DNA of 64,000 nucleotides, taken from NCBI GenBank assembly GCA_964057225.1, contig OZ059896.1, positions 11,842,001 to 11,906,000 on the forward strand. Direction: 5' to 3'. A program made the translations under genes and the position numbers. Source of the DNA: Auanema rhodensis (taxonomy: Eukaryota > Animalia > Nematoda). This document shows, one piece after another, positions 45,001-64,000 of this stretch (position 1 is its first letter; each line of letters starts with the position of its first letter). The notes below the pieces were generated by a model. That model searched no databases. It had not been told where the DNA came from and saw only the letters and a program-made list of their open reading frames with translations.

Positions 45001-48000
45001 AATTATAAAATTGTGGTAGAAATATAAAATTGTATAAAATATGAGATTAAATAAATTAGATGGAGTGAAATGGTTTAGAAAATACAAAATATTTAAATGT
45101 TTCAGTTTTTGAGCATCACAATATTGAAATTTAAATGTTTTTTAATGATTAAAAAGTTAAAAAATAAGATTATGAAATAGTGGTAGAATCATAAAATTGT
45201 TTAAAATATGGGACTAAATAAAATAGATGGAGTGAAATGGTTTAGAAAATACAAAATATTCAACTGTTTCAGTTTTTGAGCATCACAATATTGAAAATTA
45301 AATGTTTTTTAATGATTAAAAATTCAAAAATGAAATTATGAAATTGTGGTAGAACTATAAAATTGTTTAAAATATGGGATTAAATAAACTAGATGGAGTG
45401 AAATGCTTTAGAAAATACAAATATTTAAATGTTTCAGTTTTTGAGCATCACAATATTGAAATTTAAATGTTTTTTAATGATTAAAAATTTAAAGAATAAA
45501 ATTATGAAATAGTGGTGAAAATATAAAATTGTTAAAATATGGGATTAAATAAAATAGATGGAGTGAAATGGTTTAGAAAACACTAAATATTTAAATGTTT
45601 CAGTTTTTGATCATCACAATATTGAAATTTAAATGTTTTTTAATGATTAAAAATTTAAAAAATGAAATTATGGATTTGTGGTAGAAATATAAAATTGTTT
45701 AAAATATGGGATTAAATAAACTAGATGGAGTGAAATGCTTTAGAAAATACAAAATATTTAAATGTTTCAGTTTTTGAGCATCACAATATTGAAATTTAAA
45801 AATTTTTTAATGATTAACAATTTAAAAAATGAAATTATAAAATAGTGGTAGAATCATAAAATTGTTTAAAATATGGGATTAAATAAACTAGATGGAGTGA
45901 AATGCTTTAGAAAATACAAATATTTAAATGTTTCAGTTTTTCATCATCACAATATTGAAATTTAAATGTTTTTTAATGATTAAAAATTTAAAAAATGAAA
46001 TTATGGATTTGTGGTAGAAATATAAAATTGTTCAAAATATGGGATTAAATAAACTAGATGGAGTGAAATGCTTTAGAAAATACAAAATATTTAAATGTTT
46101 CAGTTTTTGAGCATCACAATATTGAAATTTAAATGTTTTTCAATGATTAAAAATTTAAAAATGAAATTATGAAATAGTGGTAATATATAAAATTGTTTAA
46201 AATATGGGATTAAATAAAATAGATGTAGTGAAATGGTTTAGAAAATACAAAATATTTAAATGTTTCAGTTTTTGAGCATCACAATATTGAAATTTAAAAA
46301 TTTTTTAATGATTAAAAATTAAAAAAATGAAATTATAAAATAGTGGTAGAATCATAAAATTGTTTAAAATATGGGATTAAATAAACTAGATGGAGTGAAA
46401 TGGTTTAGAAAATACAAAATATTTAAATGTTTCAGTTTTTCATCATCACAATATTGAAATTTAAATGTTTTTTAATGATTAAAAATTTAAAAAATGAAAT
46501 TATGGATTTGTGGTAGAAATATAAAATTGTTCAAAATATGGGATTAAATAAACTAGATGGAGTGAAATGCTTTAGAAAATACAAAATATTTAAATGTTTC
46601 AGTTTTTGAGCATCACAATATTGAAATTTAAATGTTTTTCAATGATTAAAAAATTAAAAATGAAATTATGAAATAGTGGTAATATATAAAATTGTTTAAA
46701 ATATGGGATTAAATAAAATAGATGTAGTGAAATGGTTTAGAAAATACAAAATATTTAAATGTTTCAGTTTTTGAGCATCACAATATTGAAATTTAAAAAT
46801 TTTTTAATGATTAAAAATTTAAAAAATGAAATTATAAAATAGTGGTAGAATCATAAAATTGTTTAAAATATGGGATTAAATAAAATAGATGGAGTGAAAT
46901 GGTTTAGAAAATACAAAATATTCAACTGTTTCAGTTTTTGAGCATCACAATATTGAAAATTAAATGTTTTTTAATGATTAAAAATTCAAAAATGAAATTA
47001 TGAAATTGTGGTAGAACTATAAAATTGTTTAAAATATGGGATTAAATAAACTAGATGGAGTGAAATGCTTTAGAAAATACAAATATTTAAATGTTTCAGT
47101 TTTTGAGCATCACAATATTGAAATTTAAATGTTTTTCAATGATTAAAAATTTAAAAATGAAATTATAAAATTGTGGTAGAAATATAAAATTGTATAAAAT
47201 ATGAGATTAAATAAATTAGATGGAGTGAAATGGTTTAGAAAATACAAAATATTTAAATGTTTCAGTTTTTGAGCATCACAATATTGAAATTTAAATGTTT
47301 TTTAATGATTAAAAATTTAAAAAATGAAATTATAAAATAGTGGTAGAATCATAAAATTGTTTAAAATATGGGACTAAATAAAATAGATGGAGTGAAATGG
47401 TTTAGAAAATACAAAATATTCAACTGTTTCAGTTTTTGAGCATCACAATATTGGAAATTAAATGTTTTTTAATGATTAAAAATTCAAAAATGAAATTATG
47501 AAATTGTGGTAGAACTATAAAATTGTTTAAAATATGGGATTAAATAAACTAGATGGAGTGAAATGCTTTAGAAAATACAAATATTTAAATGTTTCAGTTT
47601 TTGAGCATCACAATATTGAAATTTAAATGTTTTTTAATGATTAAAAATTTAAAAAATAAAATTATGAAATAGTGGTGAAAATATAAAATTGTTAAAATAT
47701 GGGATTAAATAAAATAGATGGAGTGAAATGGTTTAGAAAATACAAAATATTTAAATGTTTCAGTTTTTGATCATCACAATATTGAAATTTAAATGTTTTT
47801 TAATGATTAAAAATTTAAAAAATGAAATTATGGATTTGTGGTAGAAATATAAAATTGTTTAAAATATGGGATTAAATAAACTAGATGGAGTGAAATGCTT
47901 TAGAAAATACAAAATATTTAAATGTTTCAGTTTTTGAGCATCACAATATTGAAATTTAAAAATTTTTTAATGATTAACAATTTAAAAAATGAAATTATAA

Positions 48001-49527
48001 AATAGTGGTAGAATCATAAAATTGTTTAAAATATGGGATTAAATAAACTAGATGGAGTGAAATGCTTTAGAAAATACAAATATTTAAATGTTTCAGTTTT
48101 TCATCATCACAATATTGAAATTTAAATGTTTTTTAATGATTAAAAATTTAAAAAATGAAATTATGGATTTGTGGTAGAAATATAAAATTGTTCAAAATAT
48201 GGGATTAAATAAACTAGATGGAGTGAAATGCTTTAGAAAATACAAAATATTTAAATGTTTCAGTTTTTGAGCATCACAATATTGAAATTTAAATGTTTTT
48301 CAATGATTAAAAATTTAAAAATGAAATTATGAAATAGTGGTAATATATAAAATTGTTTAAAATATGGGATTAAATAAAATAGATGTAGTGAAATGGTTTA
48401 GAAAATACAAAATATTTAAATGTTTCAGTTTTTGAGCATCACAATATTGAAATTTAAAAATTTTTTAATGATTAAAAATTTAAAAAATGAAATTATAAAA
48501 TAGTGGTAGAATCATAAAATTGTTTAAAATATGGGATTAAATAAACTAGATGGAGTGAAATGGTTTAGAAAATACAAAATATTTAAATGTTTCAGTTTTT
48601 CATCATCACAATATTGAAATTTAAATGTTTTTTAATGATTAAAAATTTAAAAAATGAAATTATGGATTTGTGGTAGAAATATAAAATTGTTGAAAATATG
48701 GGATTAAATAAACTAGATGGAGTGAAATGCTTTAGAAAATACAAAATATTTAAATGTTTCAGTTTTTGAGCATCACAATATTGAAATTTAAATGTTTTTC
48801 AATGATTAAAAATTTAAAAATGAAATTATGAAATAGTGGTAATATATAAAATTGTTTAAAATATGGGATTAAATAAAATAGATGTAGTGAAATGGTTTAG
48901 AAAATACAAAATATTTAAATGTTTCAGTTTTTGAGCATCACAATAATGAAATTTAAAAATTTTTTAATGATTAAAAATTTAAAAAATGAAATTATAAAAT
49001 AGTGGTAGAATCATAAAATTGTTTAAAATATGGGATTAAATAAACTAGATGGAGTGAAATGGTTTAGAAAATACAAAATATTTAAATGTTTCAGTTTTTG
49101 ATCATCACAATATTGAAATTTAAATGTTTTTCAATGATTAAAAATTTAAAAATGAAATTATGAAATAGTGGTAATATATAAAATTGTTTGAAATATGGGA
49201 TTAAATAAAATAGATGTAGTGAAATGGTTTAGAAAATACAAAATATTTAAATGTTTCAGTTTCTGAGCATCACAATATTGAAATTTAAATGTTTTTCAAT
49301 GATTAAAAATTTAAAAATGAAATTATGAAATAGTGGTAATATATAAAATAGTTTAAAATATGGGATTAAATAAAATAGATGTAGTGAAATGGTTTAGAAA
49401 ATACAAAATATTTAAATGTTTCAGTTTCTGAGCATCACAATATTGAAATTTAAATGTTTTTTAATGATTAAAAATTTAAAAAATGAGATTATGAAATAGT
49501 GGTAATATATAAAATTGTTTAAAATAT
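1..49527 (+). repeat. AT-rich tandem satellite, 167-bp monomer (variants 165-175 bp), roughly 295 copies, forward orientation; begins before the window
   Basis: Monomer starts (GGTAG/GGTAA) fall at 1, 168, 343 and 510, giving spacings 167, 175, 167. The 175-bp form carries an 8-bp duplication (AAAAATTT). Near-invariant cores GATGGAGTGAAATGGTTTAGAAAA and TGTTTCAGTTTTTGA(G/T)CATCACAATA recur throughout. Hand count of a consensus monomer is 31 G+C in 167. Confidence 0.98.
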
Positions 49528-49548
49528 ATAATTTAAATAAATTATATA
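49525..49548. other. Satellite orientation switch with a perfect 11-bp-arm palindrome
   Basis: The sequence is TATATAATTTA-AA-TAAATTATATA. A forward monomer breaks after ...GTTTAAAATAT, and the reverse-complement monomer (TTCAATATTGTGATG...) starts right after the hairpin. Confidence 0.93.
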
Positions 49549-52500
49549 AATTCAATATTGTGATGATCAAAAACTGAAACATTTAAATATTTTGTATTTT
49601 CTAAACCATTTCACTCCATCTATTTTATTTAATCCCATATTTTAAACAATTTTATATATTACCACTATTTCATAATCTCATTTTTTAAATTTTTAATCAT
49701 TAAAAAACATTTAAATTTTAATATTGTGATGCTCAAAAACTGAAACATTTAAATATTTTGTATTTTCTAAACCATTTCACTACATCTATTTTATTTAATC
49801 CCATATTTTAAACAATTTTATATATTACCACTATTTCATAATTTCATTTTTAAATTTTTAATCATTGAAAAACATTTAAATTTCAATATTGTGATGCTCA
49901 AAAACTGAAACATTTAAATATTTTGTATTTTCTAAAGCATTTCACTCCATCTAGTTTATTTAATCCCATATTTTAAACAATTTTATATTTCTACCACAAA
50001 TCCATAATTTCATTTTTTAAATTTTTAATCATTAAAAAACATTTAAATTTCAATATTGTGATGCTCAAAAACTGAAACATTTAAATATTTGATTTTTCTA
50101 AAGCATTTCACTCCATCTAGTTATTTAATCCCATATTTTAAACAATTTTATATTTCTACCAGTATTTCATAATTTCATTTTTTAAATTTTTAATCATTAA
50201 AAAACATTTAAATTTCAATATTGTGATGCTCAAAAACTGAAACATTTAAATATTTTGTATTTTCTGAACCATTTCACTCCATCTCTTTTATTTAATCCCA
50301 TATTTTAAACAATTTTATATTTCTACCGCTATTTCATAATTTCATTTTTTAAATTTTTAATCATTAAAAAACATTTAAATTTCAATATTGTGATGCTCAA
50401 AAACTGAAACATTTAAATATTTTGTATTTTCTAAACCATTTCACTCCATCTATTTTATTTAATCTCATATTTTATACAATTTCATATTTCTACCACAATT
50501 TCATAATTTCATTTTTTAAATTTTTAATCATTAAAAAACATTTAAATTTCAATATTGTGATGCTCAAAAACTGAAACATTTAAATATTTTGTATTTTCTA
50601 AACCATTTCACTACATCTATTTTATTTAATCCCATATTTTAAACAATTTTATATATTACCACTATTTCATAATTTCATTTTTAAATTTTTAATCATTGAA
50701 AAACATTTAAATTTCAATATTGTGATGCTCAAAAACTGAAACATTTAAATATTTTGTATTTTCTAAAGCATTTCACTCCATCTAGTTTATTTAATCCCAT
50801 ATTTTAAACAATTTTATATTTCTACCACAAATCCATAATTTCATTTTTTAAATTTTTAATCATTAAAAAACATTTAAATTTCAATATTGTGATGCTCAAA
50901 AACTGAAACATTTAAATATTTGATTTTTCTAAAGCATTTCACTCCATCTAGTTATTTAATCCCATATTTTAAACAATTTTATATTTCTACCAGTATTTCA
51001 TAATTTCATTTTTTAAATTTTTAATCATTAAAAAACATTTAAATTTCAATATTGTGATGCTCAAAAACTGAAACATTTAAATATTTTGTATTTTCTGAAC
51101 CATTTCACTCCATCTCTTTTATTTAATCCCATATTTTAAACAATTTTATATTTCTACCGCTATTTCATAATTTCATTTTTTAAATTTTTAATCATTAAAA
51201 AACATTTAAATTTCAATATTGTGATGCTCAAAAACTGAAACATTTAAATATTTTGTATTTTCTAAACCATTTCACTCCATCTATTTTATTTAATCTCATA
51301 TTTTATACAATTTCATATTTCTACCACAATTTCATAATTTCATTTTTTAAATTTTTAATCATTGAAAAACATTTAAATTTCAATATTGTGATGCTCAAAA
51401 ACTGAAACATTTAAATATTTTGTATTTTCTAAACCATTTCACTACATCTATTTTATTTAATCCCATATTTTAAACAATTTTATATATTACCACTATTTCA
51501 TAATTTCATTTTTAAATTTTTAATCATTGAAAAACATTTAAATTTCAATATTGTGATGCTCAAAAACTGAAACATTTAAATATTTTGTATTTTCTAAAGC
51601 ATTTCACTCCATCTAGTTTATTTAATCCCATATTTTAAACAATTTTATATTTCTACCACAAATCCATAATTTCATTTTTTAAATTTTTAATCATTAAAAA
51701 ACATTTATATTTCAATATTGTGATGATCAAAAACTGAAACATTTAAATATTTTGTATTTTCTAAACCATTTCACTCCATCTATTTTATTTAATCCCATAT
51801 TTTAAACAATTTTATATATTACCACTATTTCATAATTTCATTTTTAAATTTTAATCATTGAAAAACATTTAAATTTCAATATTGTGATGCTCAAAAACTG
51901 AAACATTTAAATATTTTGTATTTTCTAAAGCATTTCACTCCATCTAGTTTATTTAATCCCATATTTTGAACAATTTTATATTTCTACCACAAATCCATAA
52001 TTTCATTTTTTAAATTTTTAATCATTAAAAAACATTTAAATTTCAATATTGTGATGATGAAAAACTGAAACATTTAAATATTTGTATTTTCTAAAGCATT
52101 TCACTCCATCTAGTTTATTTAATCCCATATTTTAAACAATTTTATGATTCTACCACTATTTTATAATTTCATTTTTTAAATTTTTAATCATTAAAAAACA
52201 TTTAAATTTCAATATTGTGATGAGCAAAAACTGAAACATTTAAATATTTTGTATTTTCTAAACCATTTCACTCCATCTATTTTATTTAATCCCATATTTT
52301 AACAATTTTATATTTTCACCACTATTTCATAATTTTATTCTTTAAATTTTTAATCATTAAAAAACATTTAAATTTCAATATTGTGATGCTCAAAAACTGA
52401 AACATTTAAATATTTGTATTTTCTAAAGCATTTCACTCCATCTAGTTTATTTAATCCCATATTTTAAACAATTTTATAGTTCTACCACAATTTCATAATT

Positions 52501-53819
52501 TCATTTTTGAATTTTTAATCATTAAAAAACATTTAATTTTCAATATTGTGATGCTCAAAAACTGAAACAGTTGAATATTTTGTATTTTCTAAACCATTTC
52601 ACTCCATCTATTTTATTTAATCCCATATTTTAAACAATTTTATGATTCTACCACTATTTTATAATTTCATTTTTTAAATTTTTAATCATTAAAAAACATT
52701 TAAATTTCAATATTGTGATGCTCAAAAACTGAAACATTTAAATATTTTGTATTTTCTAAACCATTTCACTCCATCTAATTTATTTAATCTCATATTTTAT
52801 ACAATTTTATATTTCTACCACAATTTTATAATTTCATTTTTAAATTTTTAATCATTGAAAAACATTTAAATTTCAATATTGTGATGCTCAAAAACTGAAA
52901 CATTTAAATATTTTGTATTTTCTAAAGCATTTCACTCCATCTAGTTTATTTAATCCCATATTTTAAACAGTTTTATATTTCTACCACAATTTTATAATTT
53001 CATTTTTAAATTTTTAATCATTGAAAAACATTTAAATTTCAATATTGTGATGATCAAAAACTGAAACATTTAAATATTTTGTATTTTCTAAACCATTTCA
53101 CTCCATCTATTTTATTTAATCCCATATTTTAAACAATTTTATATATTACCACTATTTCATAATCTCATTTTTTAAATTTTTAATCATTAAAAAACATTTA
53201 AATTTCAATATTGTGATGCTCAAAAACTGAAACATTTAAATATTTGTATTTTCTAAAGCATTTCACTCCATCTAGTTTATTTAATCCCATATTTTAAACA
53301 ATTTTATATTTCTACCACAATTTCATAATTTCATTTTTTAAATTTTTAATCATTAAAAAACATTTAAATTTCAATATTGTGATGCTCAAAAACTGAAACA
53401 TTTAAATATTCTGTAATTTCTAAACCATTTCACTCCATCTCTTTTATTTAATTCCATATTTTAAACAATTTTATATTTCTACCACAATTTCATAATTATA
53501 TTTTTTGAATTTTTAATCATTAAAAACATTTAAATTTCAATATTGTGATGCTCAAAAACTGAAACATTTAAATATTCTGTAATTTCTGAACCATTTCACT
53601 CCATCTCTTTTATTTAATTCCATATTTTAAACAATTTTATATTTCTACCACAATTTCATAATCTCATTTTTTAAATTTTTAATCATTAAAAAACATTTAA
53701 ATTTCAATATTGTGATGCTCAAAAACTGAAACATTTAAATATTCTGTAATTTCTGAACCATTTCACTCCATCTCTTTTATTTAATTCCATATTTTAAACA
53801 ATTTTATATTTTTACCGCT
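49549..53819 (-). repeat. Same 167-bp satellite, inverted orientation, about 25 copies
   Basis: Reverse-complement cores TTTTCTAAACCATTTCACTCCATC and ATATTGTGATGCTCAAAAACTGAAACA repeat at ~167-bp spacing. Confidence 0.97.
53815..53819. repeat. Left target-site duplication (CCGCT)
   Basis: CCGCT directly precedes the TGTCG start of the element and is repeated at 60191-60195. Removing the element and one copy restores the satellite sequence TTTACCGCTATTTCATAAT. Confidence 0.95.
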
Positions 53820-54352
53820 TGTCGTTTTGTCCTCTAGTTGGAGAGCGAATAACGGGCATTTGTGGTTCAGTAGTAGTGGAATATTAGTCCAAGTAATAGG
53901 CAATAGACGCGAGTACAAGAGAAGAGTTTATTATCGGCAATACGAATACAATACGAGTAAAATAGAAATAAATTGACGGGAAGATGATAGCGGTGGCAGA
54001 ATGATATTGAGACATGATTTAGAAGAATTATTGCGGGTTTATATACTAGGTCCCCGGAAGTGATAGATAATGTATTAATTGTAGAAGGCGAGAGGAGGGG
54101 TCTAAATCCTACGTGATTCATCCCCCTTGCAAGTGGGCGACGGCTATCGCGCCTAAGATCTTGCCTAATGGATCAGATGGCAAAGGGCGATAGGTGATTC
54201 ATCGGCAAATCGGCCGTTGGTGACAACTTACAGGATTATCGATTAGATAGTTGAGGATAATGGATAGTATAAAGAGAGGACAATAAAGAAGTACAATTGA
54301 ACTTAAACTAAGGAGGAACACTATTATCACGGGATGAGAGTGCTTCAGCACA
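53820..54352 (-). repeat. 3' LTR (533 bp)
   Basis: Matches 59658-60190 at offset 5838, except 53872 A vs 59710 G and 54340 G vs 60178 A (manual comparison). Confidence 0.96.
53927..53932 (-). terminator. Putative polyadenylation signal AATAAA in the 3' LTR (equivalent site 59765-59770 in the 5' LTR)
   Basis: TTTATT on + reads AATAAA on the element strand, ~105 nt downstream of the TATA box, which fits a U3-R-U5 layout. Confidence 0.6.
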
Positions 54353-54360
54353 CTCCGGCC
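54353..54360 (-). promoter_or_regulatory. Short PPT-like plus-strand primer site (GGCCGGAG)
   Basis: G-rich GGCCGGAG directly abuts the TGT start of the 3' LTR on the element strand. It is short and interrupted by Cs, so the call rests mainly on position. Confidence 0.55.
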
Positions 54361-54376
54361 GTCGAGAAGAGAACAT

Positions 54377-55129
54377 CTATATGGTGATGATCGCCGCCTG
54401 AGTCTTGTTCCTCTTAGTGGGTAGAATTTCTTGTTCCATTTCTTTTCTAGTCTTGATCCTACCGGTAGTCTGCGTTTCCTTAGACACTCTAGGCTTGGCT
54501 TGGATCCCTTTCGCTAGTAGTTCCTTGATCTCTTTCAGTTCTTTCTTTAGCCAGTCGATTTTCTTTTGTTGGTCGAGCTGTTCGATTAGCACTGAGGTCA
54601 TCCTTTTGTTCTCCGATCTCATCTGTTTTAGTTCTTCCAATATTTCTTTGAGCTCCGGCTGCGCTTCTACGACGATGATGTTTCCCTTGGGTTGAGGACA
54701 TCCTGGCGCTTCTCCGTCCTTTTTGATGGTAGAGGAGTTGTACGGCATTTTGTCTCCGTTTATCGCTGGGATGTGTTCCCTTTGGATACTCTTCATCAAC
54801 TCGTTTAGTCTTCTCTCGTTTCCAAAAGGTTTGAGCTTGTCTTGCTCATTTTGGAACACGTGGTGTGTTCTTGCGGTGCTAAGGAAATCTTTGAGTCTTA
54901 TGAAGTTTTTTAAGGCAGTGGCGGCGCTGTTGATGAGATTGGATTTGTCAGAGAGTTCACTTGCCTCAGTTTTGTAAAAATCCCTGAGTGATTGGTCCAT
55001 GTGCTGTGTGAGTTCCTTCAAGCATTCAATCCGTTTCTCTCTTGTGAGCTTCAGAAACGAGTCGCATCTTTCTTGTGATCTTTGCAAGACCAGGTTGATT
55101 TCGCAGGCTCTAGTGCTGGCGAGTGACAT
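54377..55129 (-). CDS. Unknown ~250-aa helical/coiled-coil accessory protein, in frame with the Gc C-terminus
   Basis: C-terminal part of ORF 54377..55741 from MSLASTRACEIN to the stop 24 nt before the LTR. It is uninterrupted, charged and heptad-rich (ELKEILEELKQMRSEN, LKKELKEIKELLAKG) and contains KETQT. I recognise no family. Confidence 0.65.
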   Translation of the reverse strand: MSLASTRACEINLVLQRSQERCDSFLKLTREKRIECLKELTQHMDQSLRDFYKTEASELSDKSNLINSAATALKNFIRLKDFLSTARTHHVFQNEQDKLKPFGNERRLNELMKSIQREHIPAINGDKMPYNSSTIKKDGEAPGCPQPKGNIIVVEAQPELKEILEELKQMRSENKRMTSVLIEQLDQQKKIDWLKKELKEIKELLAKGIQAKPRVSKETQTTGRIKTRKEMEQEILPTKRNKTQAAIITI

Positions 55130-55159
55130 AGTGAATAGAATGAATACTACTAGGATGTG

Positions 55160-56703
55160 AGTTTTCCTTGACTTTAGGAGAAGGAGCTGGCGCCAAAAAA
55201 TGATAAAGACGCGGAGGGGAATGAGAAAGATGTAACATGTTGCGGCAGCCATGTAGTGGGCGGTGCCTAGTGCCAGTCTGGTAGCGTATGTTGTAATGAT
55301 GTAATAGGAAAAGGTAAAAGCGATTATGGCAATGAGTAGACAGGTTGCTAATGCTTTGTACCATTCCTGATAGATGTTGTAAAAGTGAGTAATGTCGGGC
55401 CAAGAAAAGGTGAAGGCTGTTTCTTGGAGAGACGAGTGATTCCCGAGTATGTAATGAGAGCGTAGGTCTTGAAGTGTGTTGACGTAGTACAGCATTCCTG
55501 AGAGGAGGAATGTGTTTTCTTGTGTTCCGCAGGTGTATGCGCATGTGATCCTAGGTGAGGCTGAGGTGATAGGCAGCTGGATGGAGTTGGTTGTTCCTTG
55601 TGGACTGCATTGTGTCATGAATGCGGATTCACCACATTGTATAGCTCCAGAGTTGGTTGAGGTGAAGTACATGTGATACTTGCTTGGGCTCCTCGGTTGC
55701 AGTTGTAACATCCGGTTAATGGTGAATCCTGAATGTTGCAATGTGTGGAGTCTTGAGATGAGGAAGTGTGGAATTCCCCGTCGATTTTGATGTGGATTAC
55801 AGTTAACATGTTGCTGTTAATGTTGATCCGTAAGTTTCTTTCCTCGTTCATGATCATGTAAGAGGGTGTTAGCATTGGAATAGCTGATTGTACGTTGGTA
55901 AAGGCTGAGGTGATGGATGTTTCGTGGCACTGGCAGTTGACCTGGTCTTCTGCCGGTGTGCAAACGCAGGTGGGTGTGGCGTTACAGTTCATGTTTATAG
56001 CGTCTCTTCTGCTCGGGCATGAGAGCATGGGTTGTTGATTCCATATAGCTGTTCTTGCAAGGTTGCGGATGAATTTGTATTGCATCGCAGGTATGACTGG
56101 CGGTGAGAGACTTGTAATAGTTAGCGTGAATGGATATATGTGCTTCGGAACGTCAGAGTATAGAGTGACGTTTTTGGAGATGGTGGTTGATCCGTTTCGG
56201 TATGTTAGGCTGAGGTCCGTTGTAGGTGTCCAAGAGTTGCAGTCGTATACTTCATATATCGAGGTATCAGTCGGCTTCTGGTAGGTCCTGTAGAAAAGAC
56301 ATCCTGATGAAGGGTAAAAACATCCGCATCCTATGCCACCACAGGATTCTGTGCAGTGTGTTGTTCCTGGGTACTGGTTAGCTATGTGAAGTTCGCTGAC
56401 AGTTGAGTTTGGGGTGATGTTGCTTCATTTTTCTTCTTGGCATGATCCAGTGTGTGGGCATCTTTTGCTGTCTTGTACGTGAGTCTTTGATTCTCTTGTG
56501 AAGTAAAGGGACCGAGTCTCACACTTGTAGTTGGTTTTGATCCACTGTATTCTCAAGAAAGAGATATTGTCTTGATTGTTTGATAATGTGAGGCAGGCTT
56601 CTTGAGTGTATGGACTGATGTTGAGATTATGCGTGGTTTGTATGTGGCATTTCTCTTGGATGCAAGTGGACTGTTCGGAGGATGTGATCGCGAGTTCTTG
56701 GCA
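55160..56703 (-). pseudogene. env: Env: phlebovirus Gc-like class II fusion glycoprotein, disrupted
   Basis: Starts at VTFS|CQEL. Contains KRCPHTGSC, the fusion-loop motif CTESCGGIGCGCFYPSSGCLFYR (56287-56355), LTGCYNCNRGA and a C-terminal TM segment ALATCLLIAIIAFTFSYYII. There is an in-frame TGA at 56425-56427 (probably a former Cys) and a frameshift near 55650. Pieced together from ORFs 56425..56925, 55615..56085 and 54377..55741. Confidence 0.9.
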
Positions 56704-57380
56704 TGAGAAGGTGACTTGTATCAAACTCATCAGAGCTAGGAGTGGTATGGCTGATTTGTGCGGCCTCGGTTGACGTGTGTGTCGGATCGTCTTGATTATG
56801 GTCATTATGATGGTGGTGCATAATCGTATCCAAAGCCGGATTGGTTTTCCTATGACCCATGGTGTGTATAGAATGCCGTAGCATAAGGCTGTGAGCATGT
56901 ATGTAAGGAATGTGAGAAGTAGCATTGATGTCCATGGCCAGCAAGATGGATTGAAAAGTGTAGCAGTGCAGAAGGTGCATGTGACAGTGGAGCAGAAATG
57001 TACCGCTGGGTGATCATCATGTGATGAATTCTGGAATTGTGTTGGAAGGTCCAGCTTACGTCGTAGTTGGTTAGGATGTCCGCTGGGGGAAATATAAGGT
57101 TTCCATCGTGGCTGTTGTTATAGCATGTGTTGTGGATGCATACTTGTTGATTGTTTGTCGAGATTCCTTGAATTTGAACTCCTTGGTAGTTGCAAGATAT
57201 TGTTGGTGTGGCAGAGATGATGGGTAGAAGTATTGAGAATATTGATAGAAAGGTGAATAGGTTTGTTCTTTGTTCTCCGTACCATAATCTAGGTACGTTC
57301 CTTGGATTAGACTGCCTTATTGGTGGGACATCTTTCGAAGGATTAGTGTTTCGTAGTCTTTCAGGAATGTCGTCGTCTGA
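56704..57380 (-). pseudogene. Linker, signal peptide and short Cys-rich Gn-like membrane protein preceding Gc; frameshifted
   Basis: Signal-like TNLFTFLSIFSILLPIISA (57210-57266) is followed by a Cys-rich ectodomain. After a frameshift near 57010 it reads PAVHFCSTVTCTFCTATLFNPSCWPW, then a TM segment, a basic tail and a second signal-like segment AIPLLALMSLIQVTFS. Confidence 0.75.
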
Positions 57381-59078
57381 GAGTTCCAGCGGATGTAGAA
57401 GGTTCACTGGTCGTTTGAGTTCTCTGCCTGATTCTGAAAGAAGCGTGACTTCTCTGGTCTGTCCGTTCTTGTCTGGTGAGATATGTGTGATTTTTCAATC
57501 GGCCATTTGTACCGAGGTATCGGACTGTCGTTGATAAGTACGTATTGGTCGATTCTTGGCTGTTGATTGGAACCAGCTTTCTTCACCGAGATGTTGTTCT
57601 TGTGGTGTTCTCTTAACTCTTTGAGGTAGAGTTCGATCCATAACTCCCAGAATTTGTTTGTGCGTTGTCTGGAGGAATGGATGGCTTTTTCTGTGTCTGC
57701 TCTTGTTTGTAATTCAGGGTTGTCGAGGTATTCTTCGTCGTCATCGTCCGAGTGGAATGAAATGTTCAGGTCCAAGTCTTTGTGAATAAAGTCACATGGT
57801 CTGATTATTTCATCTGTTCCTGTGTCGGATCCGATGTATGTGAGTGGGCGAGTGTTGAGTGTTGCTTCACATTCAGCTAAGGTGATTGACAGTTCTTCGC
57901 TTGTTGGTATGTTCTTCATGGTTTTGTGAAGAGAGTCTTTTACTGATCGGATAAGGCGTTCGTAGAATCCTGCTTGCCAGGGGGCGTAAGGTGTTATGTT
58001 GTGCCATTTTATCTTATGGCTGTCACCTGTTTGTGTCGTGTTGGCGATGCTGAACAGTCTGTTCGCCACTTTCTGTCCTAGTTCGAATGTGGTGGCGTTA
58101 TCGCAAGTGATGCTTTCCGGATATCCTCTACGTGCCCATATCTTCCTTAGACAGTTAAGAAATGCTTTTGTGGTAAGGTCTTCTATAACTTCTAAGTGTA
58201 GTAGGCGTGTGACTGTGCAGGTATAGATGCAACCCCATACTTTGTGAGGTTTGTCCTTTACCGTCAGCGGTCCGAAGTAGTCGAGGCCTATGTGTTGGAA
58301 TGGTCGGCTTCGGTTGAGTCTTCTGCTGGGTATGTCGCCAGATGGGGGGTACGTGAATGGTCGGTTGTTCATTCGTTGGCACTCTACGCATCTTCGTATG
58401 ACTGAGATGGTTTGTGAGCGAAGTTGTGGTATCCAGAATTTCTGTCGAACTTCGGCCATGGTGTGTGACGTGCTTTTGTGAAATCGGTTGTGGACGTGTT
58501 CGATAATTAAGGTGGCTGTCCTTGTTTTGGGTAAGACGATGATAGGAAGTTTTGCACTCTCATCTAGTTCACTATTCTGCATTCGTCCGCGGCTGTGCCA
58601 AAGATGATCTTTCAACAGTGGTCTTAAGTCGTTTCGTTGTGCTGCTGTAAGACGTACGAGTAGGTTGTGTTGATGCAGATGGAGAAGGTTCAGTTCGGCT
58701 TCTTCGTAATGTGTCGGTAGTCGTTTCTCTAACAGCGAATAATTCTCTGCGATCCATTTTTCTTGTGCTTGGATCCATGTGTTGCAGTGTTCTAGCCAGG
58801 ATTCTTCGTATTCTTCAGATGTCCTAGCTGTATTCACTGTGATTTCTGGTTGAGGTAATGAGAAGAGGGGACCATTAATGGCTTTGTCAATTTGTGCTTT
58901 GGGATTCCACCAGAAATGATTTAGTAGCTCGTCTGTTGTGCAACCTCTTGTGGCAATGTCGGCTGGGTTGTCTTTGGTGTTGATGTAACCAAAGTATGTC
59001 TTGATATCCATATCTTCGATTTGGTCGATGTGGTCGTAGATTTCCTTGATTCTGTTTTGTACTAAGACTCCTGAGTGA
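57381..59078 (-). pseudogene. pol: pol remnant: end of RNase H, connector and integrase (HHCC, DDE core, Pao C-terminal domain)
   Basis: ORF 57404..59098 contains NPADIATRG, HVHNRFH...CVEC, and catalytic D (GLDYFGP), D (TCDNA) and E (FYERL). A frameshift near 57491-57497 (WPI|KITHISPDKNGQTREVTL...KRPVNLLHPLEL) would rejoin it to the env frame. It has no true start because it is fused out of frame to gag. Confidence 0.92.
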
Positions 59079-59697
59079 GTGTGTGGAACAAGCACCAAAA
59101 GTTTTTCCAGCTTTTCACGTTGCCATCGAAGCGTGGGATATCGACAGGTTTGAGTGTTGGCCGTGATCGATATGTTTCCCAGCTTCGAGGTTGTGTGGCG
59201 TGTGTGAGTTCAGCAGTTCCAACGAGGTGGTGCTCAGAGGGCTGTGAACTGTCTGTGTGTGTTGGGTCAGGGCTGTTCTCAGTGTGGTTGAGACCCTTCA
59301 GGTAGTTGACTTGTTCTTGTATGTCGTTACTGTATGACAGAAGGGTTGAGATGTGTTTCCGCAGAGTTTCTTCGTTCTTCGTGATCCGACTTTGGTCCTC
59401 GGGGCGTAGGTCTGTTGGGATGTGTTTCATCTCGTCCATCAGTTTGTTGATGGCGAGGATGTCCCTATTGATGTTTGAAATCTCCCTTTCACGGGTGTCA
59501 ATCATGCTTTGGGTTTTGTTGGAGGTATTAGTAACTTGACGTACCGCATATGATTTCCTCCTTGCGTCGTTGTCCTTGAGCTTAGCGAGTAATAATGAGC
59601 AGCTGCTGTTCCATTGTTCGGCGCGAGTTTCTTCGTTGGACTCGGCTTGATGCACCATGTCGTTTTGTCCTCTAGTTGGAGAGCGAATAACGGGCAT
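59062..59697 (-). pseudogene. gag: Truncated gag (N-terminal helical region plus the start of the Pao capsid-like DUF1759-type domain)
   Basis: The motif LKPVDIPRFDGNVKSWKNFWCLF is followed by a stop within a few codons, at the deletion junction. No Cys/His knuckles remain. The start codon is uncertain. Confidence 0.8.
59641..59657 (-). promoter_or_regulatory. Primer binding site, tRNA-Gly(GCC) type
   Basis: TGGTGCATCAAGCCGAG follows the 5' LTR CA with no spacer. The first 9 nt are complementary to ...GATGCACCA, the 3' end of invertebrate tRNA-Gly(GCC) as I recall it. Confidence 0.85.
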
Positions 59698-59714
59698 TTG
59701 TGGTTCAGTGGTAG
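59694..59714 (+). other. 21-nt segment matching the 5' end (acceptor strand plus D arm, A box) of tRNA-Gly(GCC), in U5; second copy at 53856-53876
   Basis: GCATTTGTGGTTCAGTGGTAG compared with the recalled tRNA-Gly(GCC) start GCAT(C/T)GGTGGTTCAGTGGTAG gives 19-20 of 21 matches. Confidence 0.75.
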
Positions 59715-59875
59715 TGGAATATTAGTCCAAGTAATAGGCAATAGACGCGAGTACAAGAGAAGAGTTTATTATCGGCAATACGAATACAATACGAGTAAAA
59801 TAGAAATAAATTGACGGGAAGATGATAGCGGTGGCAGAATGATATTGAGACATGATTTAGAAGAATTATTGCGGG

Positions 59876-59883
59876 TTTATATA
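59876..59883 (-). promoter_or_regulatory. Putative LTR TATA box (TATATAAA)
   Basis: CCTAGTATATAAACCCGC on the element strand, mid-LTR and upstream of the AATAAA. Confidence 0.65.
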
Positions 59884-60190
59884 CTAGGTCCCCGGAAGTG
59901 ATAGATAATGTATTAATTGTAGAAGGCGAGAGGAGGGGTCTAAATCCTACGTGATTCATCCCCCTTGCAAGTGGGCGACGGCTATCGCGCCTAAGATCTT
60001 GCCTAATGGATCAGATGGCAAAGGGCGATAGGTGATTCATCGGCAAATCGGCCGTTGGTGACAACTTACAGGATTATCGATTAGATAGTTGAGGATAATG
60101 GATAGTATAAAGAGAGGACAATAAAGAAGTACAATTGAACTTAAACTAAGGAGGAACACTATTATCACGGGATGAGAATGCTTCAGCACA

Positions 60191-60195
60191 CCGCT
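60191..60195. repeat. Right target-site duplication (CCGCT)
   Basis: Directly follows the ...CAGCACA end of the element. Confidence 0.95.
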
Positions 60196-63100
60196 ATTTC
60201 ATAATTTCTTTTTTTAAATTTTTAATCATTAAAAAACATTTAAATTTCAATATTGTGATGCTCAAAAACTGAAACATTTAAATATTCTGTAATTTTTAAA
60301 CCATTTCACTCCATCTCTTTCATTTAATTCCATATTTTCACAATTTCATATTTTTACCACTATTTCATAATTTGATTTTTTAAATTTTTAATCATTAAAA
60401 AACATTTAAATTTCAATATTGTGATGCTCAAAAACTGAAACATTTAAATATTTTGTATTTTCTAAACCATTTTACTCCATCTATTTTATTTAATCCCATA
60501 TTTTCACAATTTCATATTTTTACCACTATTTCATAATTTAATTTTTAAAATTTTAATCTTTAAAAAACATTTAAATTTCAATATTGTGATGATCCAAAAC
60601 TGAAACCTTTAAATATTTTTTATTTTCTAAACCATTTCACTCCATCTATTTTATTCAATCCCATATTTTAAACAATTTTATATTTCTACCACAATTTCAT
60701 AATTTCATTTTTTAAATTTTTAATCATTAAAAAACATTTAAATTTCAATATTGTGATGCTCAAAAACTGAAACATTTAAATATTTTGTAATTTCTAAACC
60801 ATTTCACTCCATCTCTTTTATTTAATTCCATATTTTAAACAATTTTATATTTCTACCACAATTTCATAATTTCATTTTTTAAATTTTTAATCATCAAAAA
60901 ACATTTGAATTTCAATATTGTGATGCTCAAAAACTGAAACATTTAAATATTTTGTATTTTCTAAACCATTTCACTCCATCTATTTCATTTAATCCCATAT
61001 TTTAAACAATTTTATATTTCTACCGCTATTTCATAATTTCATTTTTTAAATTTTTAATCATTAAAAAACATTTAAATTTCAATATTTTGATGCTCAAAAA
61101 CTGAAACATTTAAATATTCTGTATTTTCTAAACCATTTTACTCCATCTCTTTTATTTAATTCCATATTTTAAACAATTTTATATTTTTACCGCTATTTCA
61201 TAAAATCATTTTTTAAATTTTTAATCATTAAAAAACATTTAAATTTCAATATTGTGATGCTCAAAAACTGAAACATTTGAATATTCTGTAATTTCTAAAC
61301 CATTTCACTCCATCTCTTTTATTTAATTCCATATTTTAAACAATTTTATATTTCTACCACAATTTCATAATTTCATTTTTTAAATTTTTAATCATTAAAA
61401 AACATTTGAATTTCAATATTGTGATGCTCAAAAACTGAAACATTTAAATATTCTGTATTTTCTAAACCATTTCACTCCATCTCTTTTATTTAGATCCATA
61501 TTTTAAACAATTTTATATTTCTACCACGAATTCATAATTTCCTTTTTTAAATTTTTAATCATTAAAAAACATTTAAATTTCAATATTGTGATGCTCAAAA
61601 ACTGAAACATTTGAATATTCTGTAATTTCTAAACCATTTCACTCTATCTCTTTTATTTAATTCCATATTTTAAACAATTTTATATTTCTACCACAATTTC
61701 ATAATTTCATTTGTTAAATTTTTAATCATTAAAAAACATTTGAATTTCAATATTGTGATGCTCAAAAACTGAAACATTTAAATATTCTGTATTTTCTAAA
61801 CCATTTTACTCCATCTCTTTTATTTAATTCCATATTTTAAACAATTTTATATTTTTACCGCTATTTCATAAATTCATTTTTTAAATTTTTAATCATTAAA
61901 AAACATTTAAATTTCAATATTGTGATGCTCAAAAACTGAAACATTTGAATATTCTGTAATTTCTAAACCATTTCACTCCATCTCTTTTATTTAATTCCAT
62001 ATTTTAAACAATTTTATATTTCTACCACAATTTCATAATTTCATTTTTTAAATTTTTAATCATTAAAAAACATTTGAATTTCAATATTGTGATGCTCAAA
62101 AACTGAAACATTTAAATATTCTGTATTTTCTAAACCATTTCACTCCATCTCTTTTATTTAGATCCATATTTTAAACAATTTTATATTTCTACCACGAATT
62201 CATAATTTCCTTTTTTAAATTTTTAATCATTAAAAAACATTTAAATTTCAATATTGTGATGCTCAAAAACTGAAACATTTGAATATTCTGTAATTTCTAA
62301 ACCATTTCACTCCATCTCTTTTATTTAATTCCATATTTTAAACAATTTTATATTTCTACCACAATTTCATAATTTCATTTGTTAAATTTTTAATCATTAA
62401 AAAACATTTGAATTTCAATATTGTGATGCTCAAAAACTGAAACATTTAAATATTCTGTATTTTCTAAACCATTTCACTCCATCTCTTTTATTTAGATCCA
62501 TATTTTAAACAATTTTATATTTCTACCACGAATTCATAATTTCTTTTTTTAAATTTTTAATCATTAAAAAACATTTAAATTTCAATATTGTGGTGCTCAA
62601 AAACTGAAACATTTAAATATTCTGTATTTTCTAAACCATTTCACTCCATCTCTTTTATTTAGATCCATATTTTAAACAATTTTATATTTCTACCACGAAT
62701 TCATAATTTCTTTTTTTAAATTTTTAATCATTAAAAAACATTTAAATTTCAATATTGTGATGATCAAAAACTGAAACATTTAAATATTTTGTATTTTCTA
62801 AACCATTTCACTCCATATCTTTTATTTAATTCCATATTTTAAACAATTTTATATTTCTACCACATTTTCATAATTTCATTTTTTAAATTTTTAATCATCA
62901 AAAAACATTTGAATTTCAATATTGTGATGATCCAAAACTGAAACCTTTAAATATTTTTTATTTTCTAAACCATTTCACTCCATCTATTTTATTTAATCCC
63001 ATATTTTAACAATTTTATATTTTCACCACAATTTCATAATTTCATTTTTTAAATTTTTAATCATCAAAAAACATTTAAATTTCAATATTGTGATGATCCA

Positions 63101-64000
63101 AAACTGAAACCTTTAAATATTTTTTATTTTCTAAACCATTTCACTCCATCTATTTTATTTAATCCCATATTTTAACAATTTTATATTTTCACCACAATTT
63201 CATAATTTCATTTTTTAAATTTTTAATCATCAAAAAACATTTAAATTTCAATATTGTCCAAAACTGAAACCTTTAAATATTTTTTATTTTCTAAACCATT
63301 TCACTCCATCTATTTTATTTAATCCCATATTTTAACAATTTTATATTTTCACCACTATTTCATAATTTCATTTTTTAAATTTTTAATCATCAAAAAACAT
63401 TTAAATTTCAATATTGTGATGATCCAAAACTGAAACCTTTAAATATTTTTTATTTTCTAAACCATTTCACTCCATCTATTTTATTTAATCCCATATTTTA
63501 ACAATTTTATATTTTCACCACTATTTCATAATTTCATTTTTTAAATTTTTAATCATCAAAAAACATTTAAATTTCAATATTGTGATGATCCAAAACTGAA
63601 ACCTTTAAATATTTTTTATTTTCTAAACCATTTCACTCCATCTATTTTATTTAATCCCATATTTTAAACAATTTTATATTTCTACCGCTATTTCATAATT
63701 TCATTTTTTAAATTTTTAATCATCAAAAAACATTTAAATTTCAATATTGTGATGATCCAAAACTGAAACCTTTAAATATTTTTTATTTTCTAAACCATTT
63801 CACTCCATCTATTTTATTCAATCCCATATTTTAAACAATTTTATATTTCTACCGCTATTTCATAATTTCATTTTTTAAATTTTTAATCTTTAAAAAACAT
63901 TTAAATTTCAATATTGTGATGCTCAAAAACTGAAACATTTAAATATTCTGTATTTTCCAAACCATTTTACTCCATCTCCTTTATTTAATCCCATATTTTA
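60191..64000 (-). repeat. 167-bp satellite, inverted orientation, about 23 copies, continuing past the window end
   Basis: Resumes in phase after the TSD and has its own variants (TAGATCC, ACCACGAATTC, GATCCAAAACTGAAACCTTT). Confidence 0.97.

What the first reader, a model, noticed from the sequence alone, without database searches (positions are those of the whole stretch)
59641..59714. Both ends of tRNA-Gly are mirrored around the LTR end: a possible bipartite primer-capture system
Seen: the + strand reads ...GATGCACCA (tRNA 3' end, the PBS), then 36 nt, then GCATTTGTGGTTCAGTGGTAG. From memory of tRNA sequences, the second segment is nt 1-21 of tRNA-Gly(GCC) at 19-20/21, the same tRNA the PBS points to. 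The element RNA therefore carries a short 9-nt perfect PBS plus a longer U5 site complementary to the tRNA 5' strand and D arm. Established: Ty1, Ty3 and HIV-1 use secondary tRNA contacts, though generally shorter ones. Inference, four options: (a) the U5 site opens the acceptor stem and compensates for the weak PBS; (b) the nascent minus-strand cDNA contains a tRNA 5' mimic that refolds with its own primer; (c) it is a target or decoy for 5' tRNA-Gly fragments; (d) it is an antisense Pol III A box (TGGTTCAGTGG). The 5' LTR, whose U5 is transcribed, has the better match; the 3' copy has G>A at 53872. I recall that C. elegans Cer7 was reported to carry tRNA-Gly-like sequence, so check prior art.
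Basis: partly seen in the sequence, partly recalled or inferred. Interest (0 to 1): 0.85.

Follow-up and report, generated by a model that had tools for sequence, protein, structure and literature searches.

The report
Second tRNA-Gly docking site in retroelement leader
A nematode endogenous retrovirus-like element carries, besides its short primer-binding site, a conserved 15-21-base stretch that can pair with the other end of the same tRNA-Gly. This is a new example of the extended primer-tRNA contacts known from yeast Ty1/Ty3 and HIV-1.

Summary
The window holds a minus-strand BEL/Pao (Cer7/Atlas-like, phlebovirus-type env) provirus with LTRs at 53820-54352 and 59658-60190. Next to the 5' LTR lies a 9-nt perfect tRNA-Gly(GCC) primer-binding site. 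Thirty-six nt upstream, in the inferred U5, lies a 21-mer matching the complement of host tRNA-Gly nt 1-21 at 19/21.

It is not chance. The host tRNA was recovered from the genome. Thirteen of 15 Gly-primed relatives, from this genome and from other nematodes including Caenorhabditis, Haemonchus and Ancylostoma, carry an extra box complementary to the D arm/5' strand or the anticodon arm of tRNA-Gly. Sense and reversed controls give nothing.

In five related families the box and the PBS are the only invariant islands of U5. Relatives with 11-18-nt PBSs, and an Arg-primed one, lack strong boxes.

In silico the box supplies most of the binding energy. In this lineage the box also contains the gag start codon.

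Best reading (about 0.6): an extended, bipartite primer-tRNA binding site, of the kind known from Ty1, Ty3 and the HIV-1 PAS. It probably descends from a captured tRNA complement. It is a new variant of a known kind. Binding and function are untested, and RNA data gave no verdict.

The parts
59694..59714 (-). D-arm/5'-acceptor box. The element RNA here is complementary to tRNA-Gly(GCC) nt 1-4 and 7-21, 19/21 overall.
59641..59657 (-). Primer-binding site. 59649-59657 is a 9-nt perfect complement of the tRNA-Gly 3' end with CCA. 59641-59648 continues with one extra base and partial complementarity. The site lies inside the gag reading frame.
59658..59693 (-). 36-nt spacer between box and PBS. 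It is the last bases of U5 and codes for residues 2-13 of the inferred Gag N-terminus.
59695..59697 (-). ATG inside the box (complement of tRNA nt 2-4). It is the first ATG of the open frame 59062-59697. The encoded MP[VL][IL]RSP motif is kept in five families despite synonymous changes.
59658..60190 (-). 5' LTR, 533 bp, with TG...CA ends.
53820..54352 (-). 3' LTR. It differs from the 5' LTR at 53872 and 54340.
53856..53876 (-). Copy of the box in the 3' LTR, with G>A at 53872. This is a private change.
59765..59770 (-). AATAAA polyadenylation signal. It marks the approximate R/U5 border (inferred).
59876..59883 (-). TATATAAA promoter box in the LTR (inferred).
53815..53819 (.). Target-site duplication CCGCT, left copy. 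The right copy is at 60191-60195.
54353..59640 (-). Internal region of this copy: Gag N-terminus, then integrase, then Phlebovirus_G2-type env pieces. A 2925-bp internal deletion removes the gag C-terminus, protease, RT and RNase H. The junction is near 59073-59076.

Best explanation
The 21-mer is the second half of a bipartite binding site for the primer tRNA-Gly(GCC) in the 5' leader of a Cer7/Atlas-like belpaovirus.

Proposed mechanism:
1. The element RNA pairs through the box with the 5' acceptor strand, U8/G9, the D stem and the D loop of the tRNA.
2. This unzips the acceptor stem and leaves the tRNA 3' strand free.
3. The free 3' strand then anneals to the short (9-nt) PBS lying 36 nt downstream, and reverse transcriptase extends it.

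The two intermolecular helices flank the spacer. The template therefore holds both strands of the former acceptor stem. This is the same crossing topology as the HIV-1 PAS/anti-PAS plus PBS.

Sister families achieve the same end with a box against the anticodon arm. Some of those boxes lie downstream of the PBS, as the Ty1 boxes do.

What is shown: the complementarity, its conservation, its restriction to Gly-primed elements with short PBSs, and the predicted energetics.

What is inferred: that the tRNA really binds there, that binding aids primer selection, annealing, packaging or initiation, and that the boxes descend from a full tRNA complement captured next to an older PBS.
For: - Host tRNA-Gly(GCC) matches the box at 19/21 and the PBS at 9/9.
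- Extra complementarity to the tRNA body, scoring 10-16, occurs in 13 of 15 Gly-primed elements. These come from this genome, C. remanei, C. nigoni, H. contortus, A. ceylanicum and an unnamed nematode. Sense and reversed controls score 8 or less, and 0-2 of 300 shuffles reach the observed score.
- The boxes cover different, overlapping parts of the tRNA: nt 1-22, 6-23, 8-22, 10-24, 12-27, 15-27, 9-19 and 26-42. They sit at different distances from the PBS, from -189 to +38. What is kept is complementarity to the tRNA, not one fixed motif.
- In five related families, the box (11/11 plus 5/5 columns) and the PBS block (11/11) are invariant, while upstream U5 keeps only 9 of 82 positions.
- In this genome, all eight families with a PBS of 10 nt or less have a strong D box.
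- Of the families with longer PBSs, the five of the L091-L097 group (PBS 11-12 nt) have none. The family with an 18-nt Gly PBS has only a 9-mer. The tRNA-Arg(ACG)-primed family (18-nt PBS) has neither an Arg nor a Gly box. Only the L080 family (12-nt PBS) has a strong box, and it targets the anticodon arm.
- Predicted duplex energy is -34.3 kcal/mol for box:tRNA against -23.9 for PBS:tRNA. Net complex formation is -22 kcal/mol with the box, but only -3 to -6 when the box is shuffled.
- No conserved intramolecular helix sequesters the box.
- The known precedent is the bipartite PBS of Ty1 and Ty3, with boxes against the T and D arms, and a Ty1 PBS that lies inside the GAG ORF (PMC5371799, PMC4974528).
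Against: - There is no experimental or RNA-level evidence. The TSS, poly(A) site and expression are unverified; the public runs gave a single 164-nt contig.
- tRNA modifications in the D loop could weaken the pairing, and the energy model ignores them.
- Part of the box (ATGC) is also constrained as a start codon plus a proline codon.
- The families are phylogenetically related, so the link between PBS length and box strength is not independent evidence.
- An origin as a captured tRNA complement means similarity alone does not prove present function.
- The two or so mismatches at tRNA nt 5-7 persist in every family and are unexplained.
- No positive co-variation was found, meaning no non-Gly element with a box for its own tRNA.
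Confidence: 0.6

Rival explanations
1. Molecular fossil. The boxes are decaying remnants of tRNA-Gly complements copied into the element by reverse transcriptase. The route would be plus-strand read-through of the primer, followed by a shift to a downstream PBS. They would have no present role.
For: The boxes are collinear with the reverse-complemented tRNA in several elements. In the L080 family and C. nigoni they lie downstream of the PBS. In H. contortus and L071 they lie upstream, in the order anticodon box then D box. This fits an origin by capture.
Against: The boxes are the only invariant islands of U5 among families whose remaining U5 is barely alignable. They persist in elements whose Pol is only 35-40% identical. 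Neutral sequence would have been erased over that distance. Read-through alone cannot place a box upstream of the PBS.
Confidence: 0.17
2. Target or sponge for 5' tRNA-Gly fragments. Abundant 5' tRF/tRNA halves of Gly(GCC) pair with the box. This would either silence the element (host defence) or let the element soak up the fragments.
For: The site is complementary to exactly the part of the tRNA found in 5' halves, nt 1-21 and beyond. Targeting of LTR elements by 3' tRFs through the PBS is known (PMC12853362, abstract seen).
Against: A pure defence target should be lost, not conserved. The anticodon-arm boxes (nt 26-42) span the usual cleavage site of tRNA halves. No small-RNA data were available.
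Confidence: 0.08
3. A 5'-UTR translation or packaging element recognised by a protein or by the ribosome. Its likeness to the tRNA would then only be historical.
For: In the window lineage the box sits at -17 to +4 of the gag start codon.
Against: In other families the box lies far from any start codon, in R or 70-190 nt upstream of the PBS. It also extends along the tRNA in different directions. A fixed protein-binding motif does not predict this.
Confidence: 0.06
4. A tRNA 5' mimic in the minus-strand cDNA that refolds with the attached primer, or an antisense Pol III A box (option d).
For: The cDNA strand is identical to tRNA nt 1-21 at 19/21 and contains the natural A box of tRNA-Gly.
Against: There is no B box within reach. 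There is no tRNA fold on either strand by ARAGORN or Rfam. Mismatches at nt 5-7 weaken any pairing of the mimic with the tRNA 3' strand. Neither idea explains the anticodon-arm boxes.
Confidence: 0.03

Closest known systems
Ty1 (Pseudoviridae) extended/bipartite PBS: a 10-nt PBS plus boxes complementary to the T and D arms of tRNAiMet
   Same: Both have a short PBS lying inside the gag ORF. Both have extra template segments complementary to other arms of the same primer tRNA, including the D arm. The L080 family and the C. nigoni element have their box downstream of the PBS and collinear with the tRNA, as in Ty1 (PMC4974528, PMC5371799).
   Different: The superfamily (BEL/Pao) and the tRNA (Gly-GCC) are different. 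The boxes are much longer, 13-22 nt against about 6-7 nt. In the window lineage the box is upstream of the PBS in U5 and pairs with the 5' acceptor strand, which Ty1 does not use.
HIV-1 primer activation signal (PAS) in U5 pairing with the tRNALys3 T arm, and A-rich loop pairing with the anticodon; RSV U5-TpsiC contact
   Same: A second contact lies upstream of the PBS in U5, with the same crossing topology. Anticodon-arm contacts in sister families parallel the A-rich loop contact (PMC3675109 and PMC7793103, abstracts seen; PMC5371799).
   Different: The target here is the 5' acceptor strand plus the D arm rather than the T arm. The length is 15-21 nt against 8 nt. The PBS is 9 nt against 18 nt. 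The function is not tested here.
Ty3 5'-3' bipartite PBS
   Same: An 8-nt PBS is supplemented by pairing with the T and D arms (PMC5371799).
   Different: In Ty3 the second part lies about 4.8 kb away, in U3 at the other end of the RNA. Here it lies 36 nt away in U5.
Atlas virus / Cer7 / Tas group of nematode belpaoviruses
   Same: Both have a Gag-Pol-Env polyprotein in one frame, a Phlebovirus G2-like Env, and Peptidase_A17 and DUF1759 domains (PMC9094657).
   Different: The published descriptions I could read do not mention the PBS, tRNA or leader motifs. The text of PMC9094657 contains no occurrence of 'tRNA'.

Membership tests
BEL/Pao (Belpaoviridae), nematode env-carrying Cer7/Atlas-like group | Pao-type Peptidase_A17 region and DUF1759 Gag domain | tested here: met
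   A full-length sibling copy has PF05380 at 4.6e-35 and PF03564 at 9e-23. In the window copy these parts are deleted.
BEL/Pao (Belpaoviridae), nematode env-carrying Cer7/Atlas-like group | Phlebovirus G2-like envelope downstream of integrase | tested here: met
   PF07245 hits pieces of the window copy at 1e-22 and 1e-14. The sibling copy scores 1.2e-83.
BEL/Pao (Belpaoviridae), nematode env-carrying Cer7/Atlas-like group | LTRs with TG...CA ends, a target-site duplication, and a tRNA PBS abutting the 5' LTR | tested here: met
   The LTRs are 533 bp and the TSD is CCGCT. The PBS matches the tRNA-Gly 3' end.
Extended / bipartite primer-binding site (Ty1, Ty3, HIV-1 PAS type) | Template segment outside the PBS that is complementary to another part of the same primer tRNA | tested here: met
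   The match to host tRNA-Gly nt 1-21 is 19/21, and 0 of 300 shuffles reach it.
Extended / bipartite primer-binding site (Ty1, Ty3, HIV-1 PAS type) | Conservation of that complementarity among related elements above the background of the leader | tested here: met
   Invariant islands appear in alignment A1. Thirteen of 15 elements across at least four nematode genera carry a box.
Extended / bipartite primer-binding site (Ty1, Ty3, HIV-1 PAS type) | Specificity for the primer: the boxes change when the primer tRNA changes | tested here: inconclusive
   The one Arg-primed family has no Gly box, but it has no Arg box either, and it has a full 18-nt PBS. No second primer type with boxes was found.
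Extended / bipartite primer-binding site (Ty1, Ty3, HIV-1 PAS type) | Physical pairing with the tRNA and an effect on annealing, packaging or initiation | not testable with these tools
   Only thermodynamic prediction is available.
tRNA gene, pseudogene or tRNA-derived SINE | Cloverleaf-capable sequence with A and B boxes | tested here: not met
   ARAGORN finds no tRNA in the window. Rfam finds nothing at E up to 10. Only nt 1-21 are recognisable.

The most novel reading that the evidence does not exclude
In the window lineage the gag start codon lies inside the tRNA-docking box. Binding of tRNA-Gly would therefore hide the AUG and its upstream 17 nt. The primer tRNA would then act as a switch. 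It would commit an RNA molecule to reverse transcription or packaging rather than translation, by swapping both strands of its acceptor stem onto the template.
Probability: 0.15. Interest if true: 0.8.

Novelty: new variant of a known kind. Interest (0 to 1): 0.62.

Why it matters
Extended primer-tRNA contacts have been worked out for only a few elements: Ty1, Ty3, HIV-1, RSV and FIV. I found none described for Belpaoviridae.

These nematode elements offer a natural series. It includes D-arm boxes, anticodon-arm boxes, boxes upstream or downstream of the PBS, and relatives without boxes but with long PBSs. All use one highly conserved tRNA.

That makes the question of what such contacts do directly testable. 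The candidates are primer choice, unfolding of the tRNA, packaging, and a switch between translation and reverse transcription.

The finding also suggests how such contacts arise, namely from a captured copy of the primer itself.

Tried and rejected
- A tRNA gene or pseudogene on the + strand was rejected. ARAGORN and Rfam find nothing.
- A Pol III promoter was rejected because there is no B box.
- A host isodecoder matching the element's nt 5-7 variants does not exist.
- A conserved intramolecular helix between box and PBS was not found. RNAalifold gives -3 kcal/mol and no covariation.
- RNA evidence for the TSS, poly(A) site or expression gave no verdict. No RNA run holds the stretch, and one 164-nt contig at 59204-59367 is all that mapped.
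- A protein search with the Gag part found only distant insect elements. The Pol part found the nematode relatives.
- Literature. Searches for Cer7, BEL/Pao PBS and tRNA-Gly found no description of this feature.
Smaller fetches were used instead.
- The Diploscapter element (L074) has a degenerate PBS and no significant box. One A. ceylanicum element (L076, 14-nt PBS) also has no significant box.

Full report
**What is there**

The finding lies at the inner edge of the 5' LTR of a minus-strand LTR element. The LTRs occupy 53820-54352 and 59658-60190 on the + strand. Each is 533 bp with TG...CA ends. They are flanked by a CCGCT target duplication and differ at 2 positions only.

The element sits in a 166-bp satellite array. 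Its frames hit the integrase domains and Phlebovirus_G2. A full-length sibling elsewhere on the same contig carries one 2578-aa frame containing DUF1759 (Gag), an aspartic protease, RVT_1, Peptidase_A17 (Pao), integrase and Phlebovirus G2.

This is the Cer7/Tas/Atlas-virus kind of nematode belpaovirus (PMC9094657). The nearest Pol relatives are in Auanema, strongylids, Caenorhabditis and Diploscapter. The window copy has a 2925-bp internal deletion that removes the Gag C-terminus through RNase H. It also has a 511-nt extra segment before the 3' LTR.

**Check of the observation**

The + strand reads GATGCACCA (59649-59657), then 36 nt, then GCATTTGTGGTTCAGTGGTAG (59694-59714). I recovered the host tRNA-Gly(GCC) from the same genome with a pattern search and ARAGORN.

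The 21-mer equals tRNA nt 1-21 at 19/21, with mismatches at nt 5 and 6. The PBS is a perfect 9-nt complement of the 3' end with CCA. It is followed by one extra base and four more matching bases.

No host gene has a non-C at nt 5 in an otherwise genuine tRNA-Gly context, so the mismatches are real. Of 30 LTR copies of the family, 28 carry the identical box.

On the element's sense strand the order is TATA (59883-59876), AATAAA (59770-59765), box (59714-59694), spacer, then PBS (from 59657 downward). The box is therefore in U5 by inference. No RNA data could confirm this.

**Comparative evidence**

I collected leaders from other BEL/Pao families of the same genome. I also collected relatives in other nematodes through their Pol proteins.

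Nearly all use a tRNA-Gly PBS. I scored ungapped complementarity of the 200 nt upstream and 150 nt downstream of each PBS to tRNA-Gly nt 1-56. Thirteen of 15 elements scored 10-16. The same flanks scored at most 8 against the sense or reversed tRNA, and 0-2 of 300 dinucleotide shuffles reached the observed value.

Two kinds of box recur.

D-arm/5'-strand boxes:
- Eight families of this genome carry them, covering tRNA nt 1-22, 1-18, 8-22, 12-27, 6-23 and 10-24, at -57 to -189 from the PBS.
- C. remanei has one covering nt 15-27, extending to nt 1 across a 4-nt deletion.
- H. contortus has one covering nt 9-19.

Anticodon-arm boxes (nt 26-42):
- They lie downstream of the PBS at +37/+38 in the L080 family of this genome and in C. 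nigoni.
- They lie upstream of the PBS in an A. ceylanicum element and in an unnamed nematode contig.

The boxes slide along the tRNA and sit at different distances from the PBS. The common denominator is therefore complementarity to tRNA-Gly, not one fixed motif.

**Conservation within the window lineage**

In an alignment of five related families, the only runs of invariant columns are:
- CCACTGAACCA (11/11);
- ATGCC (5/5);
- the ACATGGTGCAT block at the LTR/PBS junction (11/11).

The 82 U5 positions upstream of the box keep only 9 invariant columns.

The ATG inside the box (59697-59695) opens the long frame. The next 6 codons encode MP[VL][IL]RSP in all five families, with synonymous third-position changes. 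The spacer length stays in frame at 13 or 16 codons.

Gag therefore most likely starts in U5, and the PBS is translated as MVH..., as in Ty1 (PMC4974528). This accounts for the ATGC part of the box. It does not account for the 11-15 invariant bases upstream of the start codon.

**Negative controls**

- Five families of this genome with 11-12-nt Gly PBSs (the L091-L097 group) show only background scores of 5-6.
- A family with a perfect 18-nt Gly PBS has only a 9-mer.
- A family primed by tRNA-Arg(ACG), whose host gene was recovered, has a perfect 18-nt PBS and no box against either tRNA.
- Every family here with a PBS of 10 nt or less has a strong D box.

This is the pattern expected if the box compensates for a short PBS. 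However, the families are related, so I treat it as suggestive only.

**Energetics**

All values use unmodified RNA parameters.
- The box:tRNA duplex is predicted at -34.3 kcal/mol and the PBS:tRNA duplex at -23.9.
- Co-folding a 131-nt leader with the tRNA gives a net gain of -22 kcal/mol, entirely through the box.
- With the box shuffled, the gain falls to between -3 and -6.
- With the PBS shuffled, the gain is unchanged.

Simultaneous pairing of box and PBS is a crossing topology that the program cannot represent. Physically it amounts to two helices flanking the 36-nt spacer on the template side and the anticodon and T arms on the tRNA side. No conserved intramolecular helix hides the box.

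**Mechanism proposed**

The box captures the 5' acceptor strand and the D arm, which melts the acceptor stem. The freed 3' strand then pairs with the short PBS and is extended.

This is the logic of the Ty1/Ty3 bipartite PBS and of the HIV-1 PAS (PMC5371799, PMC4974528, PMC3675109, PMC7793103). It is realised here in a third superfamily, with a different tRNA arm and much longer pairing.

**Origin**

Several leaders are collinear with the reverse-complemented tRNA over 30-40 nt, with gaps. This suggests that a whole complement of the primer was once copied next to a PBS and that only the useful parts were kept. This step is inference.

**Rivals**

- A functionless fossil is contradicted by the conservation islands.
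- A target for 5' tRNA-Gly fragments cannot be excluded without small-RNA data, but it predicts loss rather than retention.
- A protein-binding 5'-UTR motif does not predict boxes that slide along the tRNA.
- A Pol III A box lacks its B box and any tRNA fold.

**Novelty**

I found no description of this in the accessible literature. Two older subscription papers on Cer elements could not be read.

I rate it a new variant of a known kind. It is well supported as a sequence feature, and its function is untested.

Noticed in passing
L071:5-26; L073 about 1455-1476; also L075, L076, L077, L079 (LTRs of relatives): The 22-nt nematode SL1 spliced-leader sequence is encoded in the DNA of the LTRs of relatives from C. 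remanei, C. nigoni (21 of 22 nt), A. ceylanicum (two elements), H. contortus and an unnamed nematode. In C. remanei it lies directly after a TATATAAA, 40-150 nt upstream of the Gly PBS across the set. R therefore seems to start with SL1. The window family lacks it. I found no paper describing this.
   Followed up: partly
window 45000-53819 and 60196-64000; G000 C4 11.70-12.29 Mb: The element sits in a 165-167-bp satellite array. Twelve of the 15 copies of this family with a full-length 5' LTR/PBS match lie on the same 0.6-Mb stretch of contig C4. The sibling L070 has the same satellite at its flank. This suggests targeting to, or accumulation in, this satellite.
   Followed up: partly
G000 C6 9.61-9.69 Mb; C4 17.55-17.59 Mb; C7 9.12-9.21 Mb; C3 17.68-17.72 Mb: There are very large tandem arrays of tRNA genes. 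The tRNA-Gly D-arm 15-mer has 643 exact hits, of which about 35 are in LTRs. A tRNA-Arg(ACG) 3' 14-mer has 795 hits.
   Followed up: partly
L087:100-335: A BEL/Pao copy is inserted into a tandem array of CAT-anticodon tRNA genes that read like initiator tRNA-Met (read by eye, not run through ARAGORN). It truncates one gene at its T arm.
   Followed up: no
window 54377-55170 and about 54453-54964: The window copy carries 511 nt before the 3' LTR that the 2578-aa sibling lacks. Other siblings have frames of 2757 aa.
   Followed up: partly
L031:1495-1568: A tRNA-Gly(GCC) variant has changes at nt 2 and in the 3' acceptor strand, and has CCA encoded in the DNA. It is possibly a retro-copied tRNA pseudogene.
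   Followed up: no
G000, one search list: The genome holds at least a dozen BEL/Pao families, many with uninterrupted frames of 2270-2964 aa and near-identical LTRs. This points to recent, large-scale activity of this group.
   Followed up: partly
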